Shown one piece after another: positions 16,701 through 57,630 of a DNA stretch of 64,000 bases. How positions within the stretch are numbered: position 1 is the stretch's first letter; each line of letters opens with the position of its first letter. The translations under genes were made by a program, and so were the position numbers. Location: positions 782,440,001 to 782,504,000 of the forward strand of contig NC_091283.1 of the NCBI RefSeq assembly GCF_032444005.1, in the 5' to 3' direction. The notes under the pieces are model-generated. The model was not told the DNA's origin and ran no database searches. It saw only the letters and a list, made by a program, of their open reading frames with translations. Source of the stretch: Ranitomeya imitator. Its lineage: Eukaryota.

Positions 16701-17710
16701 TCATCCTTCTTCTCCGCTAGGTTTCTGAAACTTAACATGGACAAAACAGAATTCATCATCTTTCCCCCATCTCATGTGACCCCCCCCCAATGAACCTATC
16801 CATTACAGTGTCCAATAAAACAACATTACAGTAAATGGCTATCCACTCTCCCCAGTCCCACAAGCTCGCTGCCTCGGTGTAATCCTTGACGCTGATCTCT
16901 CCTTCAAACCACATATCCAAGCCCTTTCTACTTCCTGCTGACTTCAACTCAAAAATATTTCACAAATCCGTTCATTCCTCAACCAATAATCTGCAAAAAC
17001 CCTAGTCCATGCCCTCATCATCTCTCGCCTTGACTACTGCAACCTCCTGCTCTGTGGCCTCCCCTCGAACACTCTTGCACCCCTCCAATCTATTGTAAAC
17101 TCTGCTGCCCGACTAATCCACCTGTCCCCCGCTATTCCCCAGCTTCTCCCCTCTGTCAATCCCTTCACTGGCTCCCCATTGCCAAGAGACTCCAGTACAA
17201 AACCCTAACCATGACATACAAATCCATCCACAACCTGTCTCCTCCATACATCTGTGACCTCGTCTCCCGGTACTTTCCTGCATACAACCTCCGATCCTCA
17301 CAAGATCTCCTTCTCTATTCCCCTCTTATCTTCTCTTCCCACAATCGCATACAAGATTTCTCTCCCGCATCACCCCTACTCTGGAACTCTCTGCCACAAC
17401 ATATCAGACTCTCACCTATCATCGAAACCTTCAAAAAGAGCCTGAAGACCCACCTCTTCCGACAAGCCTATAACCTGCAGTAACCGTCGATCGACCAAAC
17501 TGCTGCATGACCAGCTCGACCCTCGCCTACTGTATTCTCACCCATCCCTTGTAGATTGTGAGCCTTCGTGGGCAGGGTCCCCTCTCCTCCTGTACCAGTT
17601 ATGACTTGTATTGTTTAAGATTATTGTACTTGTTTTTATTATGTACACCCCTCCTTACATGTAAAGCGCCATGGAATAAATGGCGCTATAACAATAAATA
17701 ATAATAATAA
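13790..17710 (+). mobile_element. L2 LINE, near full ORF2 (APE endonuclease and RT), frameshifted, with an internal deletion near 15720
   Basis: LAITETWL, IIMGDFN, LDLIFT (APE); [30 protein letters not shown] (RT); 3' stem-loop AGCGCCAT-GGAATAA-ATGGCGCT (17665-17687) and (AAT)n tail. Confidence 0.93.
13982..14793 (+). mobile_element. Family 1-related solo LTR inside the L2 ORF2 N-terminus
   Basis: TGTTGTGAATTC...CATAACA; TSD CCCCTC at 13976-13981 and 14794-14799. Confidence 0.92.
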
Positions 17711-25275: not shown

Positions 25276-25589
25276 AAAATAATTTCCCCTGCCCTGTAAT
25301 GTCCCTCATCCTGGGCCCCTTTCTGTAATAATGTCACCTTCCTAGATCGTAACTGTAGAAGAAATGAGTGCACATAGGGTCTTATCCGATGGAAAAATAA
25401 GCGATCTACTAAAATTGCACTAACCTGATAGATCTAAGGTAATGACATATAGAGAATTTGAGAATATCAGCTGCAGCAGATGTGCGGGTCCGTAGGTGAC
25501 CACATCAAATGTGAAGAGATAGAACATTTGTTGATGTAATCCGCACTGCTGATTAAAAGGCAGGACCAAAGATATCCAAATGAAGGAAA

Positions 25590-25650
25590 GTGTTTTTTAT
25601 TTCAACGCATTTTGAAGTTCAAGTGACTTGTTCCTCAGGAACATAACCAC
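25590..25650 (-). ncRNA. Degenerate type I hammerhead ribozyme motif
   Basis: Minus strand GTGGTTATGTTC-CTGAGGA-ACAAGT...ACTTC-AAAATGCGTT-GAAA; GAAA and ACGCGT altered by CpG-type changes. Confidence 0.6.
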
Positions 25651-27799
25651 ATATATACAGGAACAGGTAAAAATGGCTATACAAATAGAAAAAAAATTCA
25701 AATCTGGCGCCAATAAAAATCACATGACAAATGGTGTCAGGGTTCATAGTATTTACATATGGTATAACACATGATCTGTATATAAATTTAATATAAACAA
25801 AATAAATAGAATTCACATTGGTATTCCCATGAATAGGCAATAATACAATATATATATTGTTTCACAGATGTGTGAAAAAAGAAGGAAAAAAGACGAAAGA
25901 AAAAAATTAAAAAATTAAAGGCTCGGTTGAAAACTCACACCAAACAATAGGTGATGACACCCTCAGCCATCACCCTACGGATGTGCCACAACTACAGACA
26001 CAAGAGGAAAAAGGAGAAATACCATTACCACCTTCCGATATTCAGTGTATCAAAATAAATTTTTGAAAAAATTAAAACATACTGTATATATGTTTATTGA
26101 AAAAATAAAAAATATTAAAAATGTAATAAAAATATTGAGTCTACTGTAATGTAAAGAAATTTTGTTTTAGTATGTCACATTGATAAATGTTAAAAAAGAA
26201 AAAAAAATGTTTTATTTATTATAAAACCTGCTGAGTTGAAAAAGATTTATAAAATTATTTCAAAACGATTAATAAAACATTTCAATGAAAAAGCTTCTTT
26301 CTTATGTTGTGTATATTACCTTTCAATTTTATCGGGTAGCAATGAGCCGCAAACCTATGTGCACACAGCTATTGTACAGATAGTAATTTAGTTATGATTA
26401 AAGTAGCTACCCTGAAATCAGAGTAGCTCACCTGGAGTTAATGCAAATTAAGGAGAAAAGAATGATTATCACAAGTGGTTAAAAGTAAGAAGACCTGCGG
26501 CTTCTAATTTCGATGAGGAGCACTGTATCTATTTCTTTGGGGCTCCTCATCGATATTAGAAGCCACAGGTCTTCTTACTTTTAACTACTTGTGATCTAAG
26601 AAAGAAGCTTTTTTCATTGGAATGTTTTATTAATCGTTTTTAATTAATTTTACAAATCTTTTTTAACTTATCAGTTTTTATAATAAAATATTTTTTTCTT
26701 TTTTAACATGTAACATTGTGATATGCTTACATTTTTTTTACAATACAGTACAATCAATATTTTTATTACATTTTTAATATTTTTTATTTTTTCGATAAAC
26801 ATATATATGTTTTAATGTTTTCAAAAACTTATTTTGATACTCTAAATATCCGTAGGTGGTAATGTCATTTCTCCTATTTCGTTGTTTATGGAGTTGTGGC
26901 ACATCAGTAGTGTGACAGCTGAGGGTATCATCACCTATTGTTTGATCTTTTGGTGCGAGTTCTCAATCGAGCCTTTCGTTTTTTTATTTTTTTTTTAATT
27001 CTTTTTTCCTTCTTCCTTTTTAATATATCAGTGAAACAATATATTTTATTATTGCCTAATCATGTGAATACCTTTTAGGGGTCGAGTTCCCGCCTCTGCA
27101 CAGGGGGAATCTCGGGCCATCTTCGCTGCGGTCTCCCATTCTTCTCCTCCCGCAGTGGAGATGTCGATCCCAGTGTCTCGCTCAGTCTTACTCTGTGCAA
27201 AGGGTTACTGCTGTTTTTCCAGCTTCTGCCATTGAAGCCAGTGCTGGGCAGCGGCGAGCAGACGCTTTTTGGGACTAAGTCCAGCTTTTTCCCTTCTGAC
27301 CCTGCCCAGGGTAAGATCTCTCATTGGAGATCGAGGGTCACATGCTTAGATACTGCAGCAAAACCCATTGGTTATGTGCTTTGCGCCAGTGTGGTTACGT
27401 TTGTATGTGTTCAGGGACCCGGCTGAAATAAGCCCCTAGAATACCGGCACCCCAGTGAGGAGATTGTGTGTATGGATTCAAGGCCCCACATGAAATAAGC
27501 CCCTAGAATACTGGCTCCTCTGGTGAGGAGATTGCATGTTTGCGTAACCACCAACTGCTATCTGCTCGGCAGTCTCTGTGTACTCTTGTGAGGTTAACAG
27601 GGCACAGTGCTTTCTTTAGGTGACTCTGTAAAGTAACAGAGTTCGCTTATACCGCCATATAGGGCCGCCATTTGCCAGCAGCAGGTTCTCTCCTGCACGG
27701 TGGACCCCGGGCTGTAAATGCACCAAATAATATCTCTCTATTTACTCGGTGCGTTCCGCCAGCCCTAACAGAATATTAGCACCAGGGTCTGGCTAGTAA

Positions 27800-28886
27800 A
27801 TGGTGGATGATCAGCGTTTACAGCGGTACATCCAGCAGCTGGAGGGTAGGTTGGTGGCTCTTGAGCGCACAACCTCAGCTGTGGATGTTACCGCAGTCAC
27901 TGTTCAGGCTGCAAGTGTAGCTGCAGCCAGTTTGTCCTCTGCCACCCATGCTCTTACTTTATCCCATCTCCCGCTTCCAGACAAGTTTGCTGGTGACAGT
28001 AAGCTATGTCGGGGATTCGTGAGTCAGTGCTCCATACATCTAGAGCTCCTGGCTGCACGTTTTCCTACGGAACGGGTGAAAGTGGGATTTATTTTATCCC
28101 TTTTATCGGGCAGGGCGTTGGAGTGGGCAATGCCTCTATGGGAGCGTAATGATCGTGTGGTGCAGAGTGCTCCTCTCTTCCTGGACGCTCTGAAACAGGT
28201 TTTTTTGGGACCTCGTGTCACCCACGATATCGCGCTCCACCTGTTGGCAATAACACAGGGTTTGTCCATGGTCAGCCAGTTCACCGTCCAATTCCGGACT
28301 CTGGTCTCTGAGTTGGAGTGGCCGGAAAAAGTCCTTATTCCGGTGTACTGGAAAGGACTGGCAGACCATGTGAAGGACGCCTTGGCCACCAGGGAGATTC
28401 CCGCCACACTGGAGGAGCTCATTTCTATATCTACCCACATCGACTTCCACTTTAATGAGTGGAGGTTAGAGCGGACACAATGTAGTCAGAGGTTTCAGCT
28501 GGCTCCCACCTTCGCCAGACCTCTAGAATCTTCCGTTCAGGCGTCCGACTCCCATGAGGCCATGGAGGTTTCTCGAGCGGGACCTAAGTCTCGGACCGCT
28601 CGAGTACCCGTGGTTTGTAGAAATTGCCAATTACAAGTACATTATGCAAATAAATGTCCACGGCGGTCAGGTAAACGATCGCGTCTAGTAACCATTGGAG
28701 GAGGTTCACTAGACACAGCGGCGTTTTCCTCCAAGCTGTCCTTCAAAGGGACAATCATGTTAGACTCATCCTCTCTAACAGTCGAGCTATGTGTGGATTC
28801 TGGAGCAGAGATGAATTTCATGTCCCCTGCTTTTGCTCTGCGCCATGCAATACCTCTGGTGATGCTCGCCAAACCAGTGACTGTTA
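27800..28886 (+). pseudogene. gag (Ty3 capsid, CCHC) fused in frame to the protease N-terminus
   Basis: PDKFAGDSKLCRGF; CRNCQLQVHYANKC; LCVDSGAEMNF; the ORF is ended by the MITE inserted at 28887. Confidence 0.88.
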
Positions 28887-29081
28887 GGCTGCCATCACAC
28901 AAGCAGTATTTGGTCAGTATTTTACCTCAGTATTTGTAAGCCAAAATCAGGAGTGGAACAATTAGAGGAAAAGTATAATAGAAACATATGTACCACTTCT
29001 GCATTTATCACCCACTCCTGGTTTTGGCTTACAAATAGTGATGTAAAATACTGACCAAATACTGCTAGTGTGACGGCAGCC
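28887..29081. mobile_element. PIF/Harbinger-type MITE
   Basis: TIRs GGCTGCC(A/G)TCACAC; TTA target duplication; almost fully palindromic. Confidence 0.85.
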
Positions 29082-32000
29082 TTAGAGTTGTGAATGGGTC
29101 GACACTTCCTTCACAAATCACACACCAGACTGTCCCTTTTACATTATCCATGTCCCCTTCCCACCAGGAGATTATTTCCCTTCTTGTCCTTCCCGAGGGA
29201 ATGGACGAGATTCTGCTGGGAATACCCTGGCTCCGTTTTCACTCCCCACATATTGAGTGAACCTCTGGGAGGATATTGGGTTGGAGTGAATCATGTAAGG
29301 GCAGATGTGTGAGAGAGTGCGTTCAGGTTTCCACCACCGAGATACCCACAGATCTTTCTTCCCTTCCCAAATGCTATTGGTCCTATGCAGACGTCTTCTC
29401 CAAAAAGGCTGCGGAGACCCTTCCGCTTCACCATCCCTATAACTGTCCTATTGATCTCTTGCCTGGAGCAAAACCTCCTCGGGGATGGGTCTATCCCCTC
29501 TCTCTCCCGGAAACAGACGCTATGTCCCAATACATCCAGTAAAATTTGGCAAGAGTGTTCATTAGGAAGTCACTGTCACCTGCAGGTGTGGGGTTCTTCT
29601 TCGTGCAGAAGAAGAATGGAGAATTACATCCTTGCATAGATTACAGGGGTCTTAACGTCATCACAGTTAAAAATAAGTACCCGCTGCCCCTGATTTCTGA
29701 GCTCTTTGATACGTGAAGCAAGGGTATTTACCAAATTAGATCTGCGGGGTGCTTATAACCTGATTCGCATCCGTGAGGGGGATGAATGGAAGACAGCCTT
29801 TAATACCAGGGATGGGCACTATGAGTATCTGGTGATGCCCTTCGGGCTCTGTAATGCTCCAGCCGTTTTCCAAGACTTTGTCAGTGACATCTTCCAGGAT
29901 ATGCTCTCCACCTCGGTCGTAGTCTATCTGGATGATATTCTCATCTTCTCTCCAGATATTGACTCCCACCGGAGAGATGTTTACAGAGTCTTCGACCTCT
30001 TACGGCAAATTCCCTCTATGCAAAGTTGGAGAAGTGTATGTTTGAGCAGGAGTCTTTACCTTTCCTGGGCTATATCATCTCCGCCCAGGGATTGACTATG
30101 GATCCTGCCAAACTACAGGCTGTGATGGACTGGCAAGAACCCCATTCTCTTAAAGCAGTGCAGTGCTTTATGGGGTTCACTAACCACTATTGCCAGTTCA
30201 TTCCCCACTTCTCAACTTTGGTAGCTCCCTTGGTAGTCCTCACCAAGAAGGGAGCAAATCCCAAATTGTAGTCTGAAGAGGTCTCCAGGGCCTTCTCTTC
30301 TATTACATCTCATTTTGCTAGCGCTCCCATCCTACATCATCCCGATGTTGATAAGCCATTTATAATGGAGGTGGATGCCTCATCCGTTGGTGCAGGAGCA
30401 GTCCTCTTCCAAAAGGATGCTCAAGGTCGGAAGAATCCTTGCTTCTTCTTCTCCAAGACTTTCACACCAGCGGAGAGGAATTATTCCATCGGAGACAGGG
30501 AGTTGCTAGCAATGAAGTTGGCTTTCTCGGAGTGGAGACATCTTTTGTAAGGGTCTCGCTTTCCCTTTCAAGTCTTCACGGACCACAAAAATTTGGTATA
30601 TTTATAAACAGCCCAGCGGCTAAATTCTCTTCATTCCAGATGGTCCTTGTTCTTCTCCTGGTTCCACTTCACCCTCCTTTATCTTGCTGGGGAGAAGAAC
30701 ATTCGTGCTGATGCCCTCTCTCGCTCCGTTGTGTCATCTGAGGAGGTGGAAGGGGAGCCTCAGCTTATTGTCCATACTGAGAGCCTGAGAACCGTAACTC
30801 CGGTTTCGCTAGAGTCTGTGCCTCCGGGCAAGACTTTTGTACCCATTAATTTGCAACCTGAGGTTCTCTCTTGGGCTCATTCATCCAGGGTGGGTGGACA
30901 CTTTGGGACAAGGAGGACATCTGAGCTGCTGGTGAGGACGTACTGGTGGCTACATATGGTCTGTGACATTGGAGATTATATTCAGGTGTGTGTCTCCTGT
31001 GCCAAAAATAAGTCTCCTCGACAACGGCCAGCTGGGTTACTCTATCCCTTGCTGGTGGCAGACAGGCCCTGGGATGGTCGGGATGGACTTTGTGGTGGGT
31101 TTGCCCAAATCTTGTGGCTGTACCATCATTTGGGTTATCACCAATCATTTTTCTAAAATGGTGCATTTGGTGCCGCTTCCACTGCTACCTTCTGCACGGG
31201 CCTTGGCAGTGTTGTTCATAAAACACATCTTCTGCCTGCACGGTATGCCGGACAAAATTGTCAGTGACCGGGGTCCCCAGTTTGCGTCTCGGTTCTGGAG
31301 AGAGCTTTGTCATCTACTCAGCATTGAGTTAAATCTCTCTTTCGCATATCATTCCGAGACGAATGGCTTGGTAGAAAGGGCAAACCAGACCTTGGTCACA
31401 TATCTGCAACATTTTGTCTCAGCCAGGCAGGATGACTGGGCATCCTTGCTATCGTGGGCGGAGTTTGCACTGAACAACGCTGTAGCTGACTCCACTAGAC
31501 AAACCCCATTCCTCCTTAACTATGGTCAGCATCCGCGGGTACCTGTGCCTATGCCAGTGTCTTCCGCCAACTCCAGGGTGGCAGACTGGGCTGTGGAGGT
31601 ACGGGATACTTGGGACCACACTCAGGATGCCATTCGGGCCTCCAAGGAGGCACCCGCTCCGACTTTTGCTCCTGGCGACTTGGTGTGGCTCTCCGCCTGT
31701 AACATCAGGCTGCGAGTTGAGTCCTCTAAGTTTGCACCTCGCTACTTGGGCCCTTTCAAGGTCCTCGAACAGGTTAACCCTATGATCTACCATTTAGCCC
31801 TTCCGCCACGCCTGGGTATCACCGACTCCTTTCATGTGTCCCTCTTGAAACACGTATACATGTCCCGGTTTTCCGAGTCATTTGCCGGGACATCGGGTTC
31901 ATCTACGGACGATTACGAGGTGAACGCTATTTTGGGGTACAAGGTGGTACATGGCAAAAAATTTTATTTGGTGGAATTGAAGGGTTATGGTCCTGAGGAC

Positions 32001-33109
32001 AGGTCCTGGGAGCCTGCTTAGAACATTCAGGCACCGTAGCTCATTGCTGCCTTCGAGCGTAGAGAGGTCCAGGGGGGGCTGTGGGGGGGTGATGTTAGGG
32101 GTTGAGTTCCCACCTCTGCACAGGGGGAATCTCGGGCCATCTCCGCTGTGGTCTCCCATTCTTCTCCTGCCGCAGTGGAGCCTGCTCAGCGGAGACGTCG
32201 ATCCCAGCATCTCGCTCAGTCTGACTCTGTGCAAAGGGTTACTGCTGCTTTTCCAGCTTCTGCCATTGAAGCCAGTGCTGGGCAGCAGCGAGCAGACACT
32301 TTTGGGACTAAGTCCTGCTTTTTCCCTTCTGAGCATGCCCAGGATGAGATCTCTCATTGGAGATCGAGGGTCAAATGCTTAGATACTGCAGCAAAATCCA
32401 TTGGTTCTCCAGGAACGTCCTGAAGTTCCTCAGGCTCTGTGGCAGCCTCTCATTGGTCCTTCTAGGAAGGTCCTGTACTTGCAGCAGCTATAAAAGGTTC
32501 ACATGGCCGCATGGCCATGCGCTAGTATCAAATCTAAGTTATGTGCTTTGCGCCAGTGTGGTTACGTTTGTATGTGTTCAGGGACCTGGCTGAAATAAGC
32601 CCCTAGAATACTGGCACCTCCGGTGAGGAGATTGTGTGTATGGATTCAGGGCCCCAGCTGAAATAAGCCCCTAGAATATCGGCTCCTCTGGTAAGGAGGT
32701 TGTATGTTTGCGTAACCACCAACTGCTATCTGTTCGGCAGTCTCTGTGTACTCCTGTGAGGTTAACAGGACACAGTGCTTTCTTTAGGCGACTCTGTGCA
32801 GTAACAGAGTTCACTTCTACCGCCATATAGGGCTGCCATTTGCCAGCAGCAGGTTCTCACCTGCATGGTGGACCCTGGGATGCGAACGCACCAAATAACA
32901 TCTCTCTATTTAATCGGTGCGTTCCGCAAGCCCTAACAATACCAATGTGAATTATATTTATTTTGTTTATATTCAATTTATATACAGATCATATGTTATA
33001 TCATATGTAAATACTATGAACCCTGACACCATCTGTCATGTGATTTTTTTTGGCGCCAGATTTGAAAATGTTTTCTATTTGTATAGACATTTCTACCTGT
33101 TCTTGTATA

Positions 33110-33172
33110 TATGTGGTTGTGTTCCTGAGGAAGAAGTCACTTGAACTTTGAAACGCGTTGAAGTACAAACCA
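33110..33172 (+). ncRNA. Type I minimal hammerhead ribozyme motif (Penelope-like)
   Basis: CTGAGGA 33125-33131; stem II GAAGT/ACTTT; GAAA 33150-33153; palindromic helix III ACGCGT; helix I GTGGTT..TTC pairs with GAA..AACCAC. Confidence 0.72.
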
Positions 33173-33419
33173 CTTTCTTTCATTGGGATATCTTTGGTCC
33201 TGCATTTTAATCGGCAGTGCGGATTACATCCACCAACCTTCTACCTCTTCGAAATGTCAACTTCCTGGGACTTTTCCGGCAATTATTATATATGCACCCT
33301 CCATCCTAGTATATATGGCCGTAATCCTGGCTCCATGCTGGTATATATATTGCCCTATCCTGATATATATATGTCCTCTGTTCTACCACTGTTCTTTAAT
33401 GTTTAGAAGAAAATAAACC

Positions 33420-34329: not shown

Positions 34330-34500
34330 AAAACAACTTGAACTCTGTTGCCACTTATTGAAAGTAGCAATCCTACAAGTCATTATCGACATTTAACCAG
34401 CCTTGCCATATGACAAAAGCCAAACCAGAATCATAATTTGCAGACAGGTGTCTCAGCATGTTGCTTCTCTTTGTGAGGATTCACAAGTCTGTGGGGTCTG
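34330..34500 (-). mobile_element. Degenerate copy of the hammerhead-bearing short element seen at 51312-52018
   Basis: Reverse complement matches 51850-51990 (GAGACACCTGTCTGCAAATT..GATTCTGGTTTGGCT; GTAGGATTGCTACTTTCAATAAGTGGCAAC). Confidence 0.7.
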
Positions 34501-34762
34501 CAGTCACATAGAGTGATTGCTGTCATGTACCCTTAGGCCAGATAACCACTTTATGGTTGAACCAGGACTAAGAAAGCATGTTGCATTTAAATGCATTGGC
34601 TTTTTAACATTTTTGCATAACCATATTATGAATTTTAACTAAGATTAAATAAACATATCTTATATTTTGGATGAAAGTGGACACTTTCGCTTTTTCCTGC
34701 CATCAAACTATTCATCACCATACCCAAGTGAACGTGCGAGCTCACCATCTATCACATAAGTA

Positions 34763-39214: not shown

Positions 39215-40065
39215 GTTAATTGATTTTCTTCTATCCAACTGTTGAATTTATCGGGATAGCCTAGCCACTTCACAAATTAAAGAGTTGTACTGTGATGCCT
39301 GCGTTTTTTCACCACTTTTTCAACTTTGTAGATCCTATTAGCGTCCTGCGGTACCTTTTGTAGTTCGTCTTCATAAAAATGATCCTTCTATGCTTTCACC
39401 GCTCAAATCCCTTAATGTGTAGAGAGGTTTTCTGAATCGTGTATTTACGGCTGAGGCCATGAAAATTTCACGCCTGTAGGTTTGCTTGTAGCCTTTTGAA
39501 AAGATATGCTTATACCGTACAATCTGGACGTGATCAGCTGGTTTTAATAGAGGTTTAAATCTTTTCACGGTGGAGACGTCTTGATAAGCGCGGCACCATA
39601 TGGTCATGGAGTTAGCTTTCATGACGGTGGCAGGAAGACATTTTATAGTGCGATGATAAGCGTTATTGTAAGAGTGAACTATATCAGCTAATACATCTAT
39701 ATATCTAAACGTTTTATTAGCCGTTAAATAGCTCCACATACGCTCTTTCAACGCGCGATTTAATCTTTCCACGACCGCAGCTTTCACCGCATTATTTGTA
39801 AAGAACTGATGTACGTTATACTCTTTAAAAAGTGTAGCGATGCGTTTATTCATAAATTCTTTCCCGCAATCTGTTTGTAGTGTTTGCCAGATACGGCGCT
39901 CGCTTTTAAAAATAATCTCAAAAGCTTTTGCAAGCTCCTTGCCCGTTTTGGTCCACAGGCCGATGACCCAGAGATATTTGGATAGCATGTCTATGACCGT
40001 TAAAATATATTTTAAACCGTCGTTATCGCTTGTGTAGTCATTCATGCAGACGAGATCAGCACGCG
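39215..40065 (-). pseudogene. Polinton retroviral-like (rve) integrase with C-terminal chromodomain
   Basis: ILTVIDMLSKY, LQTDCGKEF, KAAVVERLNRALK (DDE core); VKWLGYPDKFNSWIEE at about 39225-39275. Confidence 0.88.
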
Positions 40066-40069
40066 TGTG

Positions 40070-40250
40070 GACCTTATTAATTACCCCATAGCCACACTTT
40101 TCAAACAAGTGGACATTACTCTGGGGGACCGTTTGATTTCACAATCTTATAACCTTTATAGTTACCGTGCCTACATTGAAAAGCTTTTAAACTGCAGTCC
40201 GCAAGCGTTGAGATCGCAATTTACAGCGGGGTTATTCTATAAAGACTTGA
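40070..40250 (+). pseudogene. Second, inverted major capsid fragment
   Basis: INYPIATLFKQVDITLGDRLISQSYNLYSYRAYIEKLLN..LRSQFTAGLFYKD; reverse-complement homology to about 37545-37700. Confidence 0.82.
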
Positions 40251-45067: not shown

Positions 45068-47365
45068 CATCGTATATACTTGAGTGTAAGCCGACCCGAG
45101 TATAAGCCGACCCCCTTAATTTTGCCACATAAAACTGGGAAAACTTATTGACTCGAGTATAAGCCTAGGGTAGAAAATGCAGCAGCTACCGGTAAATGTC
45201 AAAAATAACAATAGATTATTATTATTTATTTATATAGCACCATTGAGTCCATGGTACTTTACATGAGAAGGGGTTACATACAAGTTACAGATATCACTTA
45301 CAGTAAACAAACTAACAATGACAAACTGATACAGAGGGGCGAGGACCCTGCCCTTGCGGGCTTACATTCTACAGGATTATGGGGAAGGAGACAATAGGTT
45401 GAGGGTTGCAGGAGCTCCGGTGTTGGTGAGGCGGTAGCTTCGGTAGTGATGAGGTGGCAGCAGGGTCAGTGCAAGCTGTAGGCTTTCCTGAAGAGATGGG
45501 TTTTCAGGTTCCGTCTAAAGGATCCGAATGTGGTTGATAGTCGTCCGTGTTGGGGCAAAGAATTCCAGAGGATGGGGATATTCGGGAGAAGTCTTGGAGG
45601 CGGTTGGATGAGGAGCGAATAAGTGTGGAGGAGAGAAGGAGGTCTTGGGAGGACCGGAGATCACATGAGGGAAAATATCGGGAGATTAGTTCAGAGATGT
45701 ATGGAGGAGACAGGTTGTGGATGGTTTTTTAGGTCAGTATTAGTAATTTCAACTGGATACGCTGAGGAAATGGGAGCCAGTGAATAGATTTGCAGAGGGG
45801 GGAAGCAGAGGAGTAACTAGGAGAGAGATGAATTAGTCGGGCAGCAGAGTTAAGAATGGACTGGAGAGGTGCAAGGGTGTTAGCAGGGAGGCCGCAGAAA
45901 AGGATGTTGCAGTAGTCAAGGCGGGAGATGATGAGGGCGTGCACAAGCATTTTAGTAGATTGACAGTTGAGGAAAGGACGGATTCTGGAGATATTTTTGG
46001 GCTGGTGGGGACAGGAGGTGGAAAGAGCTTGGATGTGCGGTTTGAAGGACAGGGCAGAGTCGAAGGTTACTCCGAGGCAGCGGACTTCCCTCGGTACGAG
46101 GGAAAGCATGATGTCATTGATTGCGATAGATAGGTCAGGTAAGGAAGATCTATGGGATGAAGGAAAGATGATGAGTTCAGATTTGTCCACACTGAGTTTG
46201 AGGAAGCGAGAGGAGAAGAAGGAGGATATAGCTGATAGGCACTCTGGGATTCTGGACAGCAGAGCGGTGACGTCTGGGCCAGAGAGGTAGATCTGAGTGT
46301 CATCAGCATAGAGGTGGTACTGGAATCCATGGGACTTTATGAGTTGTCCCAAGCCAAGTGTATAGATTGAGAAGAGTAGGGGTTCTAGAACAGAGCCTTG
46401 GGGGACTCCAACAGAGAGAGGGTGGGATGAGGAGGTAGTGTGGGAGTGGGAGACACTGAATGTGCGGTTGGAAAGGTATGAGGAGATCCAGGATAGGGCG
46501 AGGTCTTTGATGCAAAAGGAGGAGAGGATCTGTAGTAAGAGGCAGTGGTCAAACGTGTCGAAAGCAGAGGACAGGTCTAGAAGGAGGAGTACAGAGTATT
46601 GTCCATTAGCTTTTGCGGTAATTAGGTCGTTAGTGATTTTGGTCAGGGCTGTCTCAGTTAAGTGATGGGGGCGGAAACCAGATTGTGGATTGTCAAAGAG
46701 CAAGTTAGATGAGAGGTGGGAGGAAAGTTCAGAGTGGACGTGCTGCTCCAGGAGTTTGGAAGCGACTGTGAGCAGTGATATTGGGCGATAGCTGGACTTA
46801 GCAGTTGGATCGAGGGTTGGCTTTTTAAGGATAGGCATGATTGTGGCATGTTTGAAAGCAGAAAGGAAGATACAAATAAAAGTAAAATTAATTGAGACAT
46901 CAGTAGGTTAAGTGTTTTTGAATATCCATATTGAATCAGGAGCCCAATATAATGCTCCATAGAGTTCATTATGGCCCCATAAGATGCTCCATACAAAATA
47001 CACTCCATATAATGCTCCATATTAAAATATGCCCCATCTAATGCTGCACAAAGGTTAATAATGGCTCCATAAGTGCTCCATAGAAACATTTGCCACATAC
47101 AATGCTGCATAAAGGTTGATGCCCCATAAGATGCTCCATAAATTATGGCCCAATAAGATGCTCCACACATTATGCCCCATAAGATGCTCCACACATTATG
47201 CCCCATAAGATACTCCACACATTATGCCCCATAAGATGCTCCACACATTATGTCCCATAAGATGCTCCACACATTATGCCCCATAAGATGCTCCACACAT
47301 TATTCACCATAAGATGCTCCACACATTATTCTCCATAAGATGTTCCATACCTTATTCCCCATAAG
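45067..47365. mobile_element. pogo/Tc2-type MITE with internal 26-bp minisatellite, split by an L2
   Basis: CGTATATACT(C/T)GAGTATAAGCCGAC subterminal repeats; CCCATAAGATGCTCCACACATTATG units at about 47090-47365. Confidence 0.65.
45215..46862 (-). mobile_element. 5'-truncated L2 LINE (RT)
   Basis: ORF 45729-46838 [27 protein letters not shown]; 3' stem-loop and (AAT) tail at 45215. Confidence 0.92.
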
Positions 47366-49560: not shown

Positions 49561-50809
49561 GCTAAATTAGACTTAAATTAAAATCTCTAAATGCTGGACC
49601 AGACACTGGTAGCCCATGCATTGCCCACAGCTGACTGCTGCTGTGCCATTATCATGGGTCAATTGATGCCACTTTTTCTTGGGTCTGCACTTAATTTTTG
49701 AAAACATTTGTACTCCAAGTTGTGTGTCCTTCATGTGTGTTGCTGCAGGCCTCTCAGAGCACCAGACCTACACCCGTCACTCATCCACCTGTTACCAATC
49801 AATGTTTAAGCTACAAATGCTGGTCCAAGTCCTGTCCCATTCGTCCATGCTGCACAATTATACCATATGTACTCTGAGTCCATTGATGACACTTTTCCTG
49901 GTGTCTGCCCCACATTTGAGCTGTTTGGGAAGATTTTTGCCCCCTTAAGGTGTGGTGTATGCATTTGGTTTTGCCTCCCATTGAATTCAATGGGGTTTGA
50001 TCATCCTTAAAAGATTCTCTCATTTTTAGTTGCGATTAGTCTTTTTGGAAAAATTCTCCAAAATTGGCAAATTTTAATTTCCAAAGATTTTATAATCTTG
50101 GATGAATAAATAAACTTAAAAGCTTTATCTAATTAAAAAAAATGCTTAAAATCTTGCACATTATTTTACACAATGAACTATGTTATAATATGCTAATTTT
50201 ATGTAAAGTAACTTTGGCTGTTGGCTACAATCTAGAACAAATTGTTTCTTAATATGAATAGTCTTTCACAAGCAAATGTCAAACCAAATATTCTGCTCAA
50301 TATCATTATTTTCTGAAAGAAAGAAATCTTAATATTATATACAATTATATGTAAGAGTGACATTTGAAAATCCAGTACTGGCGACTTTATCATTTATCTA
50401 AGAATTATTTAAAATTATTGAAATCAAAAGTCCCAGAATCCACATGTAAAACAAATTAGAATACTATTACTGTTCAATCACATGAAGTATCATTTCATGT
50501 GAATCAACATAATTTAACATAATAAATCCTTCATTATTGGAAAAAAATGTTTCCTGGACATGAGACATAATTCTCATTTTTTGGAAAACAGTAATCCTCA
50601 ATGGAGCAGACAGGTTGGTGTCTCATCAAAGACATCTTACTTTTATCACTATCTATACAAAGGCGTGATCTAGGAGACAGACCATTTTGACATTTTATTA
50701 TCCCAGTGTTATTTCATTGGGTAAGGATCATGTCTTAGAATACTAATAGTACAGTGAATTAGAAATACAGGAATATATAGAACATTCATTAACATAACAT
50801 AATTTGAGG

Positions 50810-51310
50810 CCAGTTTAACTCTGTCCTGGATACGTTCATGTCTGGTGTCTCTTGAAGCAATGACTCCAGCAGCAGTCCACTCCTTATGAATCTCCCCCAA
50901 ATTTTTGAATGGCATTTTATTAACAATCCTTTTAAGGATTCGGTTATCTCAGTTGCTTGTGTACCTTTTTCTACCATGCTTTTTTCTTCCACTCATCATT
51001 CCATTAATATGCTTGGATATTGCACTCTGTGAACAGCCAGTTTCTTTAGCAGTGACCTTTTGTGCCTTACCCTCCTTGTGGAGTGTGTCAATGACTACCT
51101 TCTGGACATCTGTCAAGTCAGCAGTCTTCCCCATGATTGTGGAGCCTACTGAAACAGAGAAAGGGACCTTTTTAAATGCTTAGGAAGCCTATGCATGTGT
51201 TTTTTGTTAATTATTCTAATTTACTGAAATAATGACTTTTGGGTTTTCATAGGGTGTAAGCCATAATCATCAACATTAACAGAAATAAACATTTGAAATA
51301 GATCACTCTA
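50810..51310 (-). mobile_element. Tc1 5' half (same family as 48152-49097)
   Basis: MGKTADLTDVQKVVIDTLHKEG (50949-51134); TIR homologous to 48152-48270. Confidence 0.87.
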
Positions 51311-51311
51311 G

Positions 51312-52018
51312 TATGTCACTCTCCATAAGGAGAAACGTTAAACCTTAGATACCAGTCCAGAGCCTCTCACTTAGCCAAATCAGTTCTCAATGCGATTTTT
51401 CATTCGCACCATCCGTTTTACATTCGTATGACATCCGTATGCAATCCGTTTTTTTTCTCTGCAACTATTTTTATACAGTCATTTACAGGACTATTTACAG
51501 TGTTCTATGCCACAGAATGGTAAGGTATCCGTAATAAACGGATAGAATACGGATGGTCCGTATTCCATGCGGTTTTTTTCTCGCACCCATTGACTTGCAT
51601 TGGCGAGTCTCGTCCGAGACTCGCAGCAAATCGCAGCATGCTGCGATTTTTTTCTCAGCCCGATTTCAGCTGAGAAAAAAATCGCAAATGAGATGTCACC
51701 TATTGAATAACATTGGTCCGAGTGCAATCTGAATTTTTATCGGATTGCACTCGTCCGTTTTTCTCGCAAGTGGAAAAGAGGCCTTAGACCCCAGTCCAGA
51801 GCCTCTCACTTAGCCAAATCAGTTCTCATGCTTCGCACTGACGAGGGCCAACAGCCCGAAACACCGTGTCTGCGAATTGAGATACTGATTTGGCTCTTAT
51901 CCTATGTCATATTGCACGACTCGTTAAAGGGTTAATTCTGACTTGTAGGATGGCTACTTCCAACAGGTGGCGCTATAGAGTTTAAGTCCTCGTTTTCTCA
52001 GAAGAGGCAATTTGCATG
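51312..52018 (+). mobile_element. Short hammerhead-bearing non-autonomous element (Penelope-like or retrozyme-like) with an internal MITE fragment
   Basis: Contains an intact hammerhead core; 47-bp duplication at 51343-51389 and 51782-51828 around a truncated palindromic MITE; a degenerate homolog lies at 34330-34500. Confidence 0.72.
51812..51895 (+). ncRNA. Type I hammerhead ribozyme, canonical core
   Basis: CTGACGA 51838-51844; stem II GGGC-CAACA-GCCC; GAAA 51858-51861; helix III ACA-CCG-TGT; GUC cleavage triplet ending at 51870; helix I TTCGCA/TGCGAA extended by AGCCAAATCAGT..TCTCA / TGAGA.ACTGATTTGGCT. Confidence 0.9.
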
Positions 52019-52681
52019 GTTAGCAATATATTTTGTTTGACTTTAAAACAGTTTGATAAAAAAAAGGAATAGTATAGTGTAAAAATATTCATATAAAAGT
52101 TTAAAATTTTTGTAAATCCCAGCGGCTTAATGAGAATAGTCATTTACATTTTGACGCATGAAAGTATTTCAAGTTTATTCTTTTGCTGTTTGAATGTCTT
52201 CAAGGGGGAACAAAATATTAATGAAATGCGGTACAAAGAAATCATAAGTCTTTATATCAAGCTATTTTAAAGATTAATTTACATAACTACCCCAATACAA
52301 AAAATCTTTACATTTTTCACAAAGGTTTTATCTGCAGTTCAGCACATAAATGATACAAATATTTCCATATTCTTATTCCATATTTTTTGTTTCCACACAA
52401 GATGAGAAATTCAGTGTAAAGTTACAAACTTCAGTTGTTTTCACCCAGGATTTCCATTCAGTATTATATGATAGTTACATTTTACATCGTTTTGTGTATT
52501 TTTATTATTTGAGCTTTCTATATTTTATTAAACATTATAAACATTTTACTAGTGGAAACAGGTATATGTGTGTATGAGTAAGGAATAGCATACCAGCTTA
52601 CCCAGATCTTGGAGAGAGCTGAACATTGCCATTGTTAGTCTTTTATAGAAACTGAAAAAATAAGGGTTTATCCACCAGGCG

Positions 52682-53075
52682 TGTTGTAGCTGTTTGCGTT
52701 CTGACCCAATGTCAGACATGCCAGATCACCAGTGAGGCCAAATCAGGAGGTTACACCCTTCATTTACAAGCACTTGGAGAAAAAAGAAAATTGCACACGT
52801 TCTGTGAGCAAAGTCACTTTTATCTGATGCAATGCAGCAAGAGGCAGTATTTTATACCATTTACAAGAAATATAACTCAATGTATCTCATGTAGCCCCCC
52901 ACCATTACCCAGGGTCATACTTTATTTACCACGCACCCAGAACATGTTGTGGCTGACTAATGAAAACATACATGATAAGAAGTATAAAATCCTTGAAGCG
53001 GAGCCTACCAGACTACTGCATCATGACTGAACACATTCTAGCAATTAAAGGCAAAAGACAATTACAGGCAAAACA
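52682..53075 (-). mobile_element. Probable 3' LTR of the endogenous retrovirus
   Basis: TGTT...AACA termini; purine tract AAAAGGGGAAATTGGTATAGAAGGGTTAA immediately upstream on the minus strand. Confidence 0.6.
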
Positions 53076-53823: not shown

Positions 53824-55859
53824 GTGGGCTTTCCCTCAATTTTCACTGAGGTGAATGTGGTCAGCTGGACTTTAAAATGGGCCGTCAAACCGTGGATGTA
53901 GGCTCCTTCTCACCTGTCTGGTATATCCACCCAATCACCCGGATTTAGCTGATGTACGTCTGCACTAGCATTAGGTTCTGGAATGGATGAAAACATGTTT
54001 ATGCACCACATTAAGTCTTTCCTGCAAGGCCTGGACATAGGCTGTCATAGCACCGGGTTGCATTTGTAGCATCTGTGGGAAGTGCAGACCAGTCTTTGGC
54101 GCACCACCAAACAGGACTTCAAAAGGAGACAAGCCTGTCTTTCTATTTGGAGTGTGTCTGACTGAAAAGAGTGCAAGAGGCAAGCACTGTACCCAGTTCT
54201 TTCCTGTGTCTGCCATGGCCTTTGAATTTTCAGTTTAAGTGTCCCGTTTAGTCTCTCCACTTTCCCACTACTTTGTGGTCTATATGGTGCATGATAAGCT
54301 TGTTGTACTCTCAGGGCCTGCATGACTTCCCTCATTATTTCTCCCATGAAGTGTGTACCTCTATCGCTTTCTATGGTTTCTGGGACACCATACCTGCAGA
54401 TGAGTTCTTTCATCAGTTTGTCTGCAGTCGATTTAGCATTTGCACATTTTACCGGATAGGCTTCCAGCCAACCAGAGAAGAGATCTACACATACTAGGAC
54501 ATTTTTCACACACTCCTACCTTGGGTAGCTGTATGTAGTCAGTCTGCAGTATCTGAAACGAGTAGAGAGGCCTTGGTGTCACTTTCTTAGGGATTTTTAC
54601 TGTTTTACCTGGGTTGTGCTGTACACAGATGAGGCATGACTGTACGAGTTTCACTGCTGCATAAGAGAAACCAGGAATGACCCAGAAGGCATTTACCATG
54701 GACACATGTGACATTTTGAGGTGTGAGTGGGGCCATGTGTTGTTTGCGCAATAATTAAGAACAGGGACCTTGGTATATACAATTTATCCTTATTCTCCCA
54801 TACTTCTTCTGAGTTCAGCTCAGCTCCCATTCTTCCCCAGTGTACCTTCTCTGTTTGGGCAGCTGGAGGAATTTCAGGATATCTAGGCTCAGTGTGGCTG
54901 GAATACGCTGACTCCCCGCCACCGCCCACTGCTCCCTAGGCCACCTTGCTGCTACTTTAGCAGCCTCATCCGCCCTTCTGTTGCCCTCTACCTCCACAGA
55001 GTCACCGTTCATGTGTGCTTTTACCTTGACGATGCCATCCTAGACTGTTAACATTAATGCCTCCATTAATTGTTTCACCAGCTCTGTATTTTTAATGGGC
55101 TTACCGGCTGATGTAAGAAACGCTTTGCTTCTCCAGATAGGGCCATAATCATCGGATTTTCCACATGCATGATTCAAATCTGTGTAACTGTTAGCGACTT
55201 TACCTGCAGCAGCTCTACACGCCTCAGTGAGTGCCTTCAACTCTGTCTCCTGCACTGACATGTGAGGAGCGAGTGGTTCAGCTCGGATTACCTCATGTGA
55301 GGATACTACTGCATATCCAGTGTAGAATTGCCCATCCTGGTGATATCTGGAGCCATCTACAAAAATAAAAAACTCAGAATATGCATTGGTAACAGGTTTT
55401 TTCCATGAACATATGTAAAACCCACTGTCTCCTGACTCATCAGTTCCTATGCAGTCATGTTCATGCGTCATGTCAAATTACCAAAGTACTCTTTTTCACC
55501 TGCCAACGCTGTCACCAATTCCCCCTTTTCTGAATCCACAGACAGATGAGTGGCTGGATTCAGAACATTATATCTTTTGAGGGTGATGTATACAGGAATT
55601 AGTATTAGAGCACATTCAAGTCTAAGCTGTTTAGTCATAGTCAGGTGTTTTAGTTGAACTTGTGTGAGTATGGCATTAATGTCATGTGGGGTGTAAATTG
55701 TCAAAGAAAAAGTTAGTGTGAGCTCATATGCCTAGCAGTAATACAGCAGCTCTTACAGCATGAACACACGTAGGAGACCCTCTGATCACGGGGTCTAATT
55801 GTGCTGAGCAGTAAGCTATCGGTCTCTGTTTTCCTCCATGCTTTTGTGTCAACACTGCC

Positions 55860-57630
55860 TATTTTCTTCTTTAATCAGGAGTATTTCAATAGATTTGAGT
55901 ATTTCAATAGATTTAGTAGTACATGTGTACTGCCAACTGATAGTGGATGGGAATTGGGTGCAAATTCTGCAACATCGATATTGGAGGATGAGCAGACTAA
56001 TTTTAGAGTATCCGAAAATGATGTGAGGAGGCAGTTTAAGTCACTTAACATTGGTAAAGCAGCAGGACCAGATGGACTCAGCTCACGTGTTCTTAAAGTG
56101 TGTGCAAACCAGCTGTGTACTGTCTTTACGCGCCTATTTAATGGAAGTATACAAACACAGAGGGTACCTGTGTTATGGAAAACTTCCTGTCTGGTGCCGG
56201 TACCCAAGACTTCTTCTCCTGCAACCCTAAATGACTATCGTTCTGTAGCCTTAACATCTCACGCTATGAAGGCCTTGGAAAGATTAGTGCTTGCTCACTT
56301 AAGACCAAGGGTCATTGCTTTTATCGATCCCCTTCAGTTTGCTTACCGACATAGATTGGGGGTGGATGATGCTATTCTTTCTCTGTTACATAGGGTACAT
56401 TCATTTCTGGAGATGGACGGAACCACGGTGCGAGCGATGTTCTTCGATTTCTCGAGTGCATTTAACTCCCTGCAGCCACTTTTACTTTTACTTTTACTAC
56501 ACAAAAAGATGACTGATATGAAGGTTGAGGAGGGGATGAGAAATTGGATAACTGACTACCTATCAGATCGGCCACAGTTTGTACAGATGGGAGCAGTGGT
56601 GTCAAGCAGATTACTGAGCAGTGTAGGTGCCCCCCAGGGAACGGTGCTTGCGCCCTTCCTATTCACACTGTATACTTCAGACTTTCAGTATAAATCTGAA
56701 CTTTGCCACCTTCAAAAATTTTCGGATGACTCTGTGGTTGTGGGATGCATTAGGGGAGATCAGGGGGATGAGGAATATAGAAGGGTGGTGTCGAATTTCG
56801 TGGATTGGTGCAATGGTAACTATCTACAACTAAATGTTAAGAAAACCAAGGAGTTGGTGGCCAACTATAGCAGGATTAAGTTGGAATGCTTACCGATCAC
56901 TATTGCTGGTCAGGAGGTAGAGCAGGTGGAGAGTTACAAATATTTGGGGGTCCATTTGGATAGCAAACTGGACTGGAGATGCCACACAGAGACTGTCTGC
57001 AAGAAGGGGATGAGCAGATTGTATTTCCTAAGGAAACTGAGGTCTTTTAATGTGTGCAGCAAAATGTTAGAAATGTTCTACCAGTCGGTGGTGGCAAGTG
57101 CCATCTTTTTTGCAATCACATGCTGGGGTAGTAGTGTGCGGGCCTCTGATGCTAATAGGCTGAATAAGCTTATTAAGAAGGCAAGTTCTGCTGTCGGCTG
57201 CAATCTGGACTCTTTTGGGGAGGTAGTGGAGAAAAGAACTCTGAAAAAGTGTATGGCAATTATGAACAATAATGCACATCCATTATATGAGCTATTCATG
57301 AGACAGAAGAGCACCTTCAGTAACCGGCTAATACTTCTGAGGTGTAAGAAGGAAAAATATAGGAAATCGTTTGTGCCAACTGCCATGGGAATGTAAAACA
57401 ATAACATTAGGGTTAAACCACCAAGGTGAATGTCTACATATTCTCTACATTTCAGTTCACTCGTTGTGTATGTCCTATTCTAATGTATAATGTATAATGT
57501 TCTTCTGTCATCTCTACTGTCATGTCAACTATGTAATTCCTTTATGATTTTTATGATTTAAGTTGTGCTGCTGTGATACCATAATTTCCCACGGGATCAA
57601 TAAAGTGTATCGTATCGTATCATATCGTAT
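55860..57630 (+). mobile_element. Rex1/Babar-type non-LTR retrotransposon, 5'-truncated, with an open RT frame
   Basis: ORF to 57396: GKAAGPDG, DYRSVALTS, MFFDFSSAFN, GAPQGTVLAPFLF, LQKFSDDS, SRLYFLRKLRSF; 3' end GGGATCAATAAAG followed by (TATCG)n. Confidence 0.88.

What the first reader, a model, noticed from the sequence alone, without database searches (positions are those of the whole stretch)
51812..51895. Apparently intact hammerhead ribozyme in a short (about 270-bp) non-coding mobile element
Seen: every core nucleotide is canonical (CUGACGA, GAAA, GUC), stems II and III pair perfectly, and helix I extends about 25 bp with small bulges. There is no ORF and no adjacent autonomous element. 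Known: type I hammerheads mark Penelope-like elements and retrozymes, including amphibian satellite transcripts. Inference: a dispersed, SINE-sized, ribozyme-processed retroelement family. It could cleave any transcript crossing this site on the plus strand or generate circular RNAs. Best candidate in the window for an undescribed system.
Basis: partly seen in the sequence, partly recalled or inferred. Interest (0 to 1): 0.82.

Follow-up and report, generated by a model that had tools for sequence, protein, structure and literature searches.

The report
Solo hammerhead retrozyme copy in frog
This is a real, intact-looking self-cutting hammerhead RNA motif inside one 267-base copy of a very abundant non-coding frog retroelement. 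This kind of element, a non-LTR retrozyme related to Penelope-like elements, is already described, so the find is a clean example and not a new system.

Summary
At 51812-51895 (+) there is a complete type I hammerhead:
- core CUGACGA / GAAA / GUC
- a 4-bp helix II
- a 3-bp helix III with a 3-nt loop
- a 23-bp helix I in three segments (6+5+12 bp)

A scan requiring core plus helices found 1 hit in the window and 0 in 150 simulated windows. Rfam Hammerhead_1 matches end to end, but at 30.6 bits (cut-off 34), and only when the motif is given alone.

The motif sits in a 267-bp, ORF-free, 45% GC repeat. That repeat is split here by a 392-bp foreign repeat flanked by a 47-bp duplication, and the duplication happens to keep the ribozyme whole.

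Public contigs of this frog and a related species show a very high-copy family. Other copies normally lack the 392-bp insert, and some lie head to tail. A second, decayed copy is at 34336-34530 (-). No Penelope-type gene is in the window.

Architecture, size and composition fit the non-LTR retrozymes and Penelope-derived hammerhead repeats already described in amphibians, including dispersed monomers. The short, near-palindromic helix III predicts weak cleavage unless two copies pair, so this solo copy is probably inert. The scan has already noted this kind many times in this same genome. Interest is low.

The parts
51312..51342 (+). First 31 nt of the hammerhead element. They are now separated from the rest by the insert and abut a truncated Tc1-like transposon that ends at 51309.
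   Evidence: In other family copies the sequence just upstream of the 51782 equivalent reads ATTGCACTCTCCACAAGGAGAAACGTTACC (44 contigs). That is window 51313-51342 with a few changes (table 7). Go-back joints resume at 51312 (table 5c).
51343..51389 (+). Left copy of the 47-bp duplication (element positions 32-78). It carries an orphan copy of the distal 5' strand of helix I (51373-51389).
   Evidence: It matches 51782-51828 at 45 of 47 positions. Inverted repeat I11 pairs 51373-51384 with 51884-51895.
51390..51781 (.). Foreign 392-bp insert ('B'): a hairpin-rich, unclassified composite repeat with no hammerhead. Its 3' half, 51573-51769, is a separate high-copy family bracketed by the direct repeat GTTTTT(TT)CTCGCA.
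   Evidence: Family copies skip it (joints 51335->51782 and 51340->51782). 304 contigs begin to match at 51573 (table 7). There is no other copy in the window.
51782..51828 (+). Right copy of the 47-bp duplication. It supplies the distal and middle 5' strand of helix I, so the ribozyme stays complete.
   Evidence: read directly.
51812..51895 (+). Type I hammerhead ribozyme motif. The predicted self-cleavage is between C51870 and U51871, which is element position 120/121.
51896..52017 (+). 3' part of the element, ending at 52017. Single-copy DNA follows from about 52018-52032.
   Evidence: 178 (X1) and 165 (X3) contigs stop matching at 52017. Depth falls from about 750,000 to about 10 after 52031 (tables 2 and 7). 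An X1 contig spans 51988-52710 with 2 differences (table 8).
34336..34530 (-). Old, decayed copy of the same family. It is 73% identical over 139 nt, contiguous without the 392-bp insert, and its hammerhead core is destroyed.

Best explanation
This is a single (monomeric) genomic copy of a hammerhead-bearing, non-coding, non-autonomous retroelement: a non-LTR retrozyme, the class now thought to derive from the terminal repeats of Penelope-like elements.

Life cycle of the family, inferred from the literature and not shown here:
1. Head-to-tail copies are transcribed.
2. Hammerheads of neighbouring units pair through their short, near-palindromic helix III (ACACCGUGU) into an active dimer and cut after C17.
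3. The unit-length RNA, with a 5'-OH and a 2',3'-cyclic phosphate, is circularised by a tRNA ligase (RtcB-type).
4. A Penelope-type reverse transcriptase and endonuclease encoded elsewhere copies it back into DNA.

This locus holds only one unit and one ribozyme. At most it can make one inefficient cut in a plus-strand transcript. It cannot release a circle on its own. It is most likely a dead-on-arrival copy.

After insertion it was hit at the boundary between the middle stem and the internal loop of helix I by a 392-bp unrelated repeat. The 47-bp target duplication made by that event regenerated the 5' strand of helix I, which is why the motif still looks intact.
For: Shown here:
- A complete canonical core and three helices, well beyond chance.
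- The architecture is 6-bp proximal helix I, then an internal loop, 4-bp helix II and a very short helix III. This is the 'canonical metazoan type I' design that PMC4209133 describes as needing dimerisation.
- Element properties match the class definition in PMC7229834: 267 bp, GC 0.449, no ORF, no LTR. The class has units of 150-450 bp, GC below 50% and no LTR, PBS or PPT.
- Very high-copy family in two frog species. About 30,000 contigs lay on the 2.2-kb stretch, and word depth over the element is about 10^5 times that of the unique flank.
- Head-to-tail junction contigs elsewhere in the genomes: 52017->51312 with 23 nt between in X1, and 52006->51312 in X3 (table 5c).
- Other copies lack the 392-bp insert (44 loose ends at 51782, and joints 51335/51340->51782). 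The old copy at 34.4 kb also lacks it.
- Among the best-supported majority differences listed between this copy and the family (51810, 51905, 51934, 51992), none lies in the catalytic core, helix II or helix III (table 3). The motif therefore appears to be the family's majority sequence and not an accident of this copy. This is an inference, because 159 rows were not shown.
- Family members occur in contigs of small runs guessed to be RNA, from at least three studies.

From the literature:
- Axolotl monomer constructs cleave only 6-22% in an hour, and dimers cleave far better (PMC7229834).
- Dispersed monomers and a Penelope origin are reported in Xenopus (bioRxiv 10.64898/2026.07.22.740005).
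Against: - Rfam Hammerhead_1 scores 30.6 bits, under the curated 34.
- There is no tandem partner at this locus and no target-site duplication of 6 nt or more at 51312/52017.
- The 5' end abuts a truncated Tc1-like element, so the insertion mechanism cannot be read from the flanks.
- The head-to-tail evidence rests on one contig per species.
- The RNA label of runs X8 and X17 is a guess, and contigs cannot show RNA ends or circles. Neither cleavage nor circular RNA is shown.
- Many copies lose similarity to this one exactly at 52017. In one species the head-to-tail joint coincides with this copy's ends. That hints at defined termini, which fits a linear, SINE-like or Penelope-terminal template better than rolling-circle copying of a circle.
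- No Penelope library was available to test homology to a terminal repeat.
Confidence: 0.78

Rival explanations
1. It is simply the terminal repeat (pLTR) of a heavily 5'-truncated autonomous Penelope-like element. It would not be an independently amplifying non-autonomous family.
For: - Most Penelope insertions are 5'-truncated and keep one terminal repeat. Retrozyme consensus sequences in Xenopus match Penelope termini (bioRxiv 10.64898/2026.07.22.740005).
- Many copies stop matching at the same 3' position, 52017.
- Two contigs of run X17 continue about 233 nt upstream of 51316 with a shared sequence (agreement 0.75, table 7). That could be internal Penelope sequence.
Against: - Head-to-tail joints return from 52017 to 51312 with 0-23 nt between. 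This gives a unit of about 267-290 bp, not several kb.
- No TERT-like RT or GIY-YIG ORF was found in the window.
- The canonical 6/4-bp hammerhead with a helix III is the retrozyme type. PMC4209133 reports mostly 'minimal' variants with a long helix II and a short helix I in vertebrate Penelope repeats.
Confidence: 0.15
2. It is a SINE-like family with defined ends, amplified as linear monomers. The mid-element hammerhead would then serve something other than unit excision, such as trimming read-through transcripts or making a 147-nt 5'-OH RNA.
For: - This copy's ends coincide with a head-to-tail joint in species B. Many copies lose similarity at 52017.
- The cut site is at position 120 of 267, not at an element end.
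- The 3' ends of this element and of the inserted repeat share a loose motif: TTTTCTC..AAGAGG (18 nt, 78%, D8).
Against: - Loose ends mark where this copy ends, not necessarily where the family ends. The sequences that follow 52017 in other copies share a start (ATTAAATTTC...) that resembles the 23-nt spacer in the tandem joint. This suggests the family unit runs on past this copy's end.
- The shared 3' motif is short enough to be chance.
Confidence: 0.05
3. It is a chance match, or a host-domesticated single-copy ribozyme like the amniote HH9/HH10 intronic hammerheads.
For: The bare core pattern is expected 0.8 times per window. Rfam is below threshold.
Against: - Core plus helices gave 0 hits in 150 simulated windows.
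- The motif lies in a repeat with depth about 10^5 times the unique depth, not in single-copy conserved DNA.
- Probable RNA runs have no contigs over the unique flank.
Confidence: 0.02

Closest known systems
Non-LTR retrozymes of amphibians (axolotl Rtz331/Rtz353, newt satellite 2; Cervera & de la Pena 2020, PMC7229834)
   Same: - Type I hammerhead with 6-bp helix I, 4-bp helix II and a short helix III, predicted to act as a dimer.
- Non-coding unit of a few hundred bp, GC below 50%, no LTR, PBS or PPT.
- Very high copy number.
- Head-to-tail copies exist in the family.
   Different: - This locus holds a single unit and not an array.
- The unit is about 267-290 bp, against 330-350 bp.
- Helix III is 3 bp with a triloop, slightly longer than the 1-2 bp with a tetraloop of the axolotl motifs.
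- Helix II and loop 2 read GGGC-CAACA-GCCC, against the Hammerhead_1 model consensus GUCC-CAAAUA-GGAC.
- Helix I continues to 23 bp.
- Expression as circular RNA is not shown here.
Monomeric retrozyme derivatives and Penelope terminal repeats in Xenopus (Li, Clavereau & Pollet 2026, bioRxiv 10.64898/2026.07.22.740005; Cervera & de la Pena 2014, PMC4209133)
   Same: - Dispersed single units spread along chromosomes.
- Regarded as non-transposing offspring of active arrays or as remnants of Penelope ends.
- Occur in frogs, which carry Penelope-like elements.
   Different: - Homology of this family to a Penelope terminal repeat could not be tested.
- The hammerhead is of the canonical type and not the minimal type reported for most vertebrate Penelope repeats.
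Rfam Hammerhead_1 (RF00163) and HH9 (RF02275)
   Same: Full-length alignment to Hammerhead_1 with every core position matched. The layout of 6-bp helix I, internal loop and distal stem is the same as in HH9.
   Different: - It scores 30.6 bits, below the gathering score of 34.
- It is not single-copy or conserved in an intron, as HH9 is.

Membership tests
Hammerhead ribozyme, type I | Conserved core: C3 U4 G5 A6 N7 G8 A9, G12 A13 A14, the A15.1-U16.1 pair, and H17 not G | tested here: met
   CUGACGA at 51838-51844, GAA at 51858-51860, A51861 paired with U51869, C51870.
Hammerhead ribozyme, type I | Three helices around the core, with helix I open-ended and helices II and III closed by loops | tested here: met
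   Helix I 6+5+12 bp, helix II 4 bp with a 5-nt loop, helix III 3 bp with a 3-nt loop. There were 0 such motifs in 150 simulated windows.
Hammerhead ribozyme, type I | Rfam RF00163 gathering score (34 bits) | tested here: not met
   30.6 bits, E = 1.2e-6, model positions 1-45 of 45, when 51832-51882 is searched alone. Not reported at all in the whole-window scan or the 500-bp scan.
Hammerhead ribozyme, type I | [quoted passage not shown] | not testable with these tools
   All available runs are contigs, which cannot show RNA ends.
Non-LTR retrozyme | Non-coding unit of about 150-450 bp, GC below 50%, no LTR, PBS or PPT, carrying a type I hammerhead | tested here: met
   267 bp, GC 0.449. No ORF over 78 aa. 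No terminal repeats apart from the insert-induced 47-bp duplication.
Non-LTR retrozyme | Head-to-tail tandem arrangement of units | tested here: inconclusive
   Not met at this locus, which has one unit. In the family there are go-back joints 52017->51312 (X1, 23 nt between) and 52006->51312 (X3), one contig each (table 5c).
Non-LTR retrozyme | Expressed as unit-length linear and circular RNA | tested here: inconclusive
   Diverged family members are present in contigs of runs guessed to be RNA (X8, X17 and others). No ends or circular junctions at 51870/51871 could be seen.
Non-LTR retrozyme | Insertion flanked by a target-site duplication (when present) | tested here: not met
   No shared word of 6 nt or more between the 40-nt flanks of 51312 and 52017.
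Penelope-like element (autonomous) or its terminal repeat | Adjacent ORF with a telomerase-like RT and a GIY-YIG endonuclease | tested here: not met
   ORFs of 130 aa or more in the window give Ty3-type gag, integrase and RNase H, DDE_3, and three RVT_1 ORFs. The best solved relatives of those three are LINE-1 ORF2p or R2. No GIY-YIG was found.
Penelope-like element (autonomous) or its terminal repeat | Sequence homology of the unit to the terminal repeat of a Penelope consensus from the same genome | not testable with these tools
   No repeat library and no further genome sequence of this frog was available.

The most novel reading that the evidence does not exclude
The family may be a discrete-ended, SINE-like retroelement that spreads mainly as linear monomers, with the hammerhead in mid-element at position 120 of 267. 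It may share a 3' recognition tail (TTTTCTC..AAGAGG) with the unrelated 392-bp repeat that inserted into it with an unusually long 47-bp target duplication. If so, one reverse transcriptase that makes long staggered cuts would mobilise both, and the ribozyme's role would not be unit excision for circular-RNA formation.
Probability: 0.07. Interest if true: 0.45.

Novelty: new member of a known kind. Interest (0 to 1): 0.18.

Why it matters
It matters little as a discovery. Hammerhead-bearing non-coding retroelements are established in amphibians, and this scan has already flagged and followed up many in this same poison-frog genome.

Three points are useful:
- It is a clean example of a monomer copy whose ribozyme survived a later insertion only because that insertion's 47-bp target duplication rebuilt helix I.
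- It is a caution on method. Rfam and Infernal with default filters missed a textbook-looking hammerhead in 64-kb and 500-bp scans, so Rfam-based censuses will undercount this family.
- The helix III design predicts that solo copies like this one cleave poorly. That tempers any idea that such copies routinely cut host transcripts.

Tried and rejected
- Rfam at gathering on the whole window found no hammerhead. A 500-bp E-value scan gave only weak miRNA-like hits on the hairpins of the 392-bp insert, all far below threshold. I do not read those as miRNAs.
- MFE folding of the 45-nt core, and of two copies together, did not reproduce the hammerhead helix III or the dimeric helix III. Nearest-neighbour energies do not model the hammerhead core, so this says nothing either way.
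- Folding the rebuilt 267-nt unit gave only a modest z of about -2.9 on the plus strand and -2.3 on the minus strand, with an imperfect shuffle. This is no evidence for a viroid-like rod.
- My first shuffle script timed out.
- RNAalifold on this motif plus the metagenome motif misaligned the 3' halves and was uninformative.
- The search of earlier findings by sequence returned nothing.
- I searched for a target-site duplication around 51312/52017 and found none.
- I searched the window for more copies of the 392-bp insert and found none.
- I looked for a Penelope RT/GIY-YIG in the window and found none.
- I considered that 51343-51781 is a 439-bp tandem unit. I rejected this because the two 47-bp copies are followed by unrelated sequence and other family copies lack the insert.

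Full report
**1. Is the motif there?**

Yes. Reading 51812-51895 on the plus strand gives a complete type I hammerhead.
- The 5' strand of helix I is AGCCAAAUCAGU-UCUCA-[UGC]-UUCGCA.
- The core is CUGACGA (51838-51844).
- Helix II is GGGC/GCCC, closed by CAACA (51845-51857).
- GAA lies at 51858-51860.
- Helix III is ACA/UGU, closed by CCG (51861-51869).
- C17 is at 51870.
- The 3' strand of helix I is UGCGAA-[U]-UGAGA-[U]-ACUGAUUUGGCU (51871-51895).

Helix I therefore has 6 + 5 + 12 = 23 bp. The distal 12 bp are perfectly complementary (I12).

**2. Is it more than chance?**

- The bare pattern CTGANGA...GAAA...GTC is not significant: 1 match against 0.8 expected.
- A scan that also demands helix I >=6, helix II >=4 and helix III >=3 bp found exactly this site, and none in 150 simulated windows with the same dinucleotide statistics.
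- The 96-nt stretch folds at -38.4 kcal/mol, z = -6.5.
- Rfam needs a caveat. cmscan reported nothing at gathering on the whole window, and no hammerhead even at E <= 10 on 500 bp.
- Given only 51832-51882, Hammerhead_1 aligned over its full 45 positions at 30.6 bits, E = 1.2e-6. That is still under the curated 34 bits.
- The motif therefore meets the structural definition but not Rfam's score cut-off.

**3. What does it sit in?**

A self-comparison showed two things.
- 51782-51828 repeats 51343-51389 at 45 of 47 positions, 439 bp upstream.
- 51849-51987 matches 34463-34336 on the other strand at 73%.

I laid Logan contigs on 50700-52900 at 80% likeness or better. The runs were two DNA runs, X1 of the same species and X3 of a related species, plus two small runs guessed to be RNA, X8 and X17. 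The stretch breaks down as follows.
- Single-copy DNA runs from about 52032 to 52623 (depth about 10). Everything from 50774 to 52031 is highly repeated.
- 178 (X1) and 165 (X3) contigs stop matching at 52017, which is this copy's 3' end. An X1 contig spans 51988-52710 with 2 differences.
- 44 X1 contigs that match from 51782 rightwards carry ATTGCACTCTCCACAAGGAGAAACGTTACC upstream. That is not what lies upstream of 51782 here. It is window 51313-51342, just upstream of the first 47-bp copy.
- Joints 51335->51782 (X3) and 51340->51782 (X17) say the same: normal family members run 51312-51342, then one 47-mer, then 51829-52017.

The element is therefore 267 bp with GC 0.449. It has been split by a 392-bp insert (51390-51781) flanked by a 47-bp duplication of the target.

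The decayed copy at 34.4 kb is also contiguous without the insert.

The insertion point, 51389|51390 and equivalently 51828|51829, lies between the middle stem and the internal loop of helix I. The duplicated 47-mer contains the distal and middle 5' strand of helix I, so the downstream copy reconstitutes a full ribozyme. An orphan half-helix remains at 51373-51389 (I11).

**4. Family properties**

- Copy number is very high in both species. About 30,000 contigs per DNA run lay on the 2.2-kb stretch, and word depth over the element is about 10^5 times the unique depth. The tool warns that this is not a copy number.
- Two go-back joints show head-to-tail copies elsewhere: 52017->51312 with 23 nt between (X1), and 52006->51312 with a 10-nt variant of this copy's own last bases between (X3). 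The unit is therefore about 267-290 bp.
- Positions where nearly all family contigs differ from this copy are 51810, 51905, 51934 and 51992. No listed one lies in the core, helix II or helix III. I infer that the hammerhead is the family's majority sequence, but 159 lower-ranked rows were not shown.
- Small runs guessed to be RNA, from several studies, hold 29-38% of the element's sampled words and give contigs over it (for example X8 record 31, 51800-51975, 33 differences). They give none over the unique flank.
- That is compatible with family transcription. It proves neither transcription nor processing, because contigs carry no ends or strand.

**5. Coding capacity and neighbours**

- No ORF longer than 78 aa overlaps 51312-52017, and that one lies in the insert.
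- The upstream neighbour is the N-terminal part of a Tc1-like transposase on the minus strand (50949-51134). Its terminal sequence is cut off at 51309.
- The window's large ORFs are Ty3-type gag, integrase and RNase H, a DDE_3 transposase, and three RVT_1 reverse transcriptases. The best solved relatives of those three are LINE-1 ORF2p or R2.
- No GIY-YIG or telomerase-like RT was seen among the ORFs I scanned with Pfam.
- No target-site duplication of 6 nt or more flanks 51312/52017.

**6. Comparison with what is known**

- PMC4209133 describes the canonical metazoan type I hammerhead as helix I 6 bp, helix II 4 bp, and a short helix III with a small palindromic loop. It is inactive as a monomer and active when two copies pair.
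- This motif has exactly that design. Its helix III segment ACACCGUGU is a palindrome but for the central C, so two copies could form an 8-bp extended helix III (direct reading).
- PMC7229834 defines non-LTR retrozymes as 150-450-bp, low-GC, non-coding tandem repeats with such hammerheads. [quoted passage not shown]
- For the axolotl, that paper shows 6-22% cleavage per hour for monomer constructs against efficient cleavage for dimers, and circularisation by RtcB.
- The 2026 preprint 10.64898/2026.07.22.740005 finds these elements in all seven amphibians sampled. It reports that monomer copies are evenly dispersed, with a monomer share per family from 0 to 1. It relates retrozyme consensus sequences to Penelope terminal repeats.
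- Penelope elements are widespread in anurans (PMC12822217).
- This scan's own notes name the genome as a poison frog. They list 284 hammerhead notes, several followed up as ordinary non-LTR retrozymes.

**7. Mechanism and verdict**

The best reading (about 0.78) is a monomeric, probably inert copy of a non-LTR retrozyme family, later interrupted by an unrelated short repeat.
- Shown: the motif, the element limits, the insert and its duplication, the family's abundance, and the existence of head-to-tail copies.
- Inferred from the literature: dimer-dependent cleavage, circularisation by a tRNA ligase, and reverse transcription by a Penelope enzyme.

The main rival (about 0.15) is that the family is nothing more than truncated Penelope termini. 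The two readings are evolutionarily continuous, and separating them needs a genome-wide census and a Penelope library.

A more novel reading (about 0.05-0.07) is a defined-end, SINE-like mode of spread. It draws on the coincidence of this copy's ends with a head-to-tail joint and on a loose 3' motif shared with the insert. The same loose-end data, however, suggest that other copies run on past 52017 with a shared ATTAAATTTC... start.

Chance or host domestication is effectively excluded.

The kind is known and this family is a new member. Interest is low.

Noticed in passing
window 51390-51781: A 392-bp hairpin-rich unclassified repeat is inserted into the hammerhead element, with an unusually long 47-bp flanking duplication (45 of 47 identical). 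It looks composite. Its part 51573-51769 is a separate high-copy family (304 contigs begin matching at 51573), bracketed by the direct repeat GTTTTT(TT)CTCGCA. It contains perfect hairpins at 51642-51686 and 51628-51649, which give sub-threshold miRNA-like Rfam hits.
   Followed up: partly
window 51759-51776 and 51993-52010: The 3' ends of the inserted repeat and of the hammerhead element share a loose motif (TTTTCTC..AAG.GG; 18 nt, 78%). This could be chance, or a shared 3' tail for one reverse transcriptase.
   Followed up: no
window 50774-51309: A Tc1-like transposon fragment lies on the minus strand. The transposase N-terminus MGKTADLTDVQK... is at 50949-51134. Its terminal sequence is cut off at 51309, exactly where the hammerhead element begins. 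In other copies it continues GTTTGTAATGACTC....
   Followed up: partly
window 34336-34530 (-): An old copy of the same hammerhead family, 73% identical. Its catalytic core is mutated away (…AGAGAAGCAACATGCTGAGACACC-TGTC…), which shows the family has been in the genome for a long time.
   Followed up: partly
L001:783-850 (-), metagenome contig Ga0307474_10214395: An unrelated 1.5-kb metagenome contig carries the identical 27-nt core plus helix II (CTGACGAGGGCCAACAGCCCGAAACAC). Its helix I is different but complementary, its helix III is a perfect palindrome ACACGUGU, and its cleavage triplet is GUA (Rfam HH9 23.7 bits, below threshold). It lies just downstream of a tRNA-like segment that ARAGORN does not call, and near CCCTAA-like telomeric repeats and a roughly 190-bp tandem repeat. 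It probably comes from a soil eukaryote's hammerhead repeat.
   Followed up: partly
whole window: A point of method: cmscan with Rfam's filters missed this hammerhead on 64 kb (gathering) and on 501 bp (E <= 10), and found it only when 51 nt were given alone. Rfam-based counts of hammerheads in this genome will be too low.
   Followed up: yes
window 33125-33159 (+): This is the only other hit of a relaxed hammerhead scan (helices 3/3/2 bp, CTGAGGA...GAAA...TT). About 0.13 such hits are expected per window by chance. It lies at the edge of the 25520-33260 'fold-back with hammerheads' noted by another reader. No sequence similarity links that region to the element studied here.
   Followed up: partly
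window 321-1022, 7524-8204, 15693-16793, 27800-32021, 39371-40108, 45729-46838, 54045-57396: The window is dominated by transposon remains: Ty3-type gag, protease, integrase and chromodomain ORFs, three LINE-like reverse transcriptases, a DDE_3 transposase and RNase H. No host gene was recognised.
   Followed up: partly
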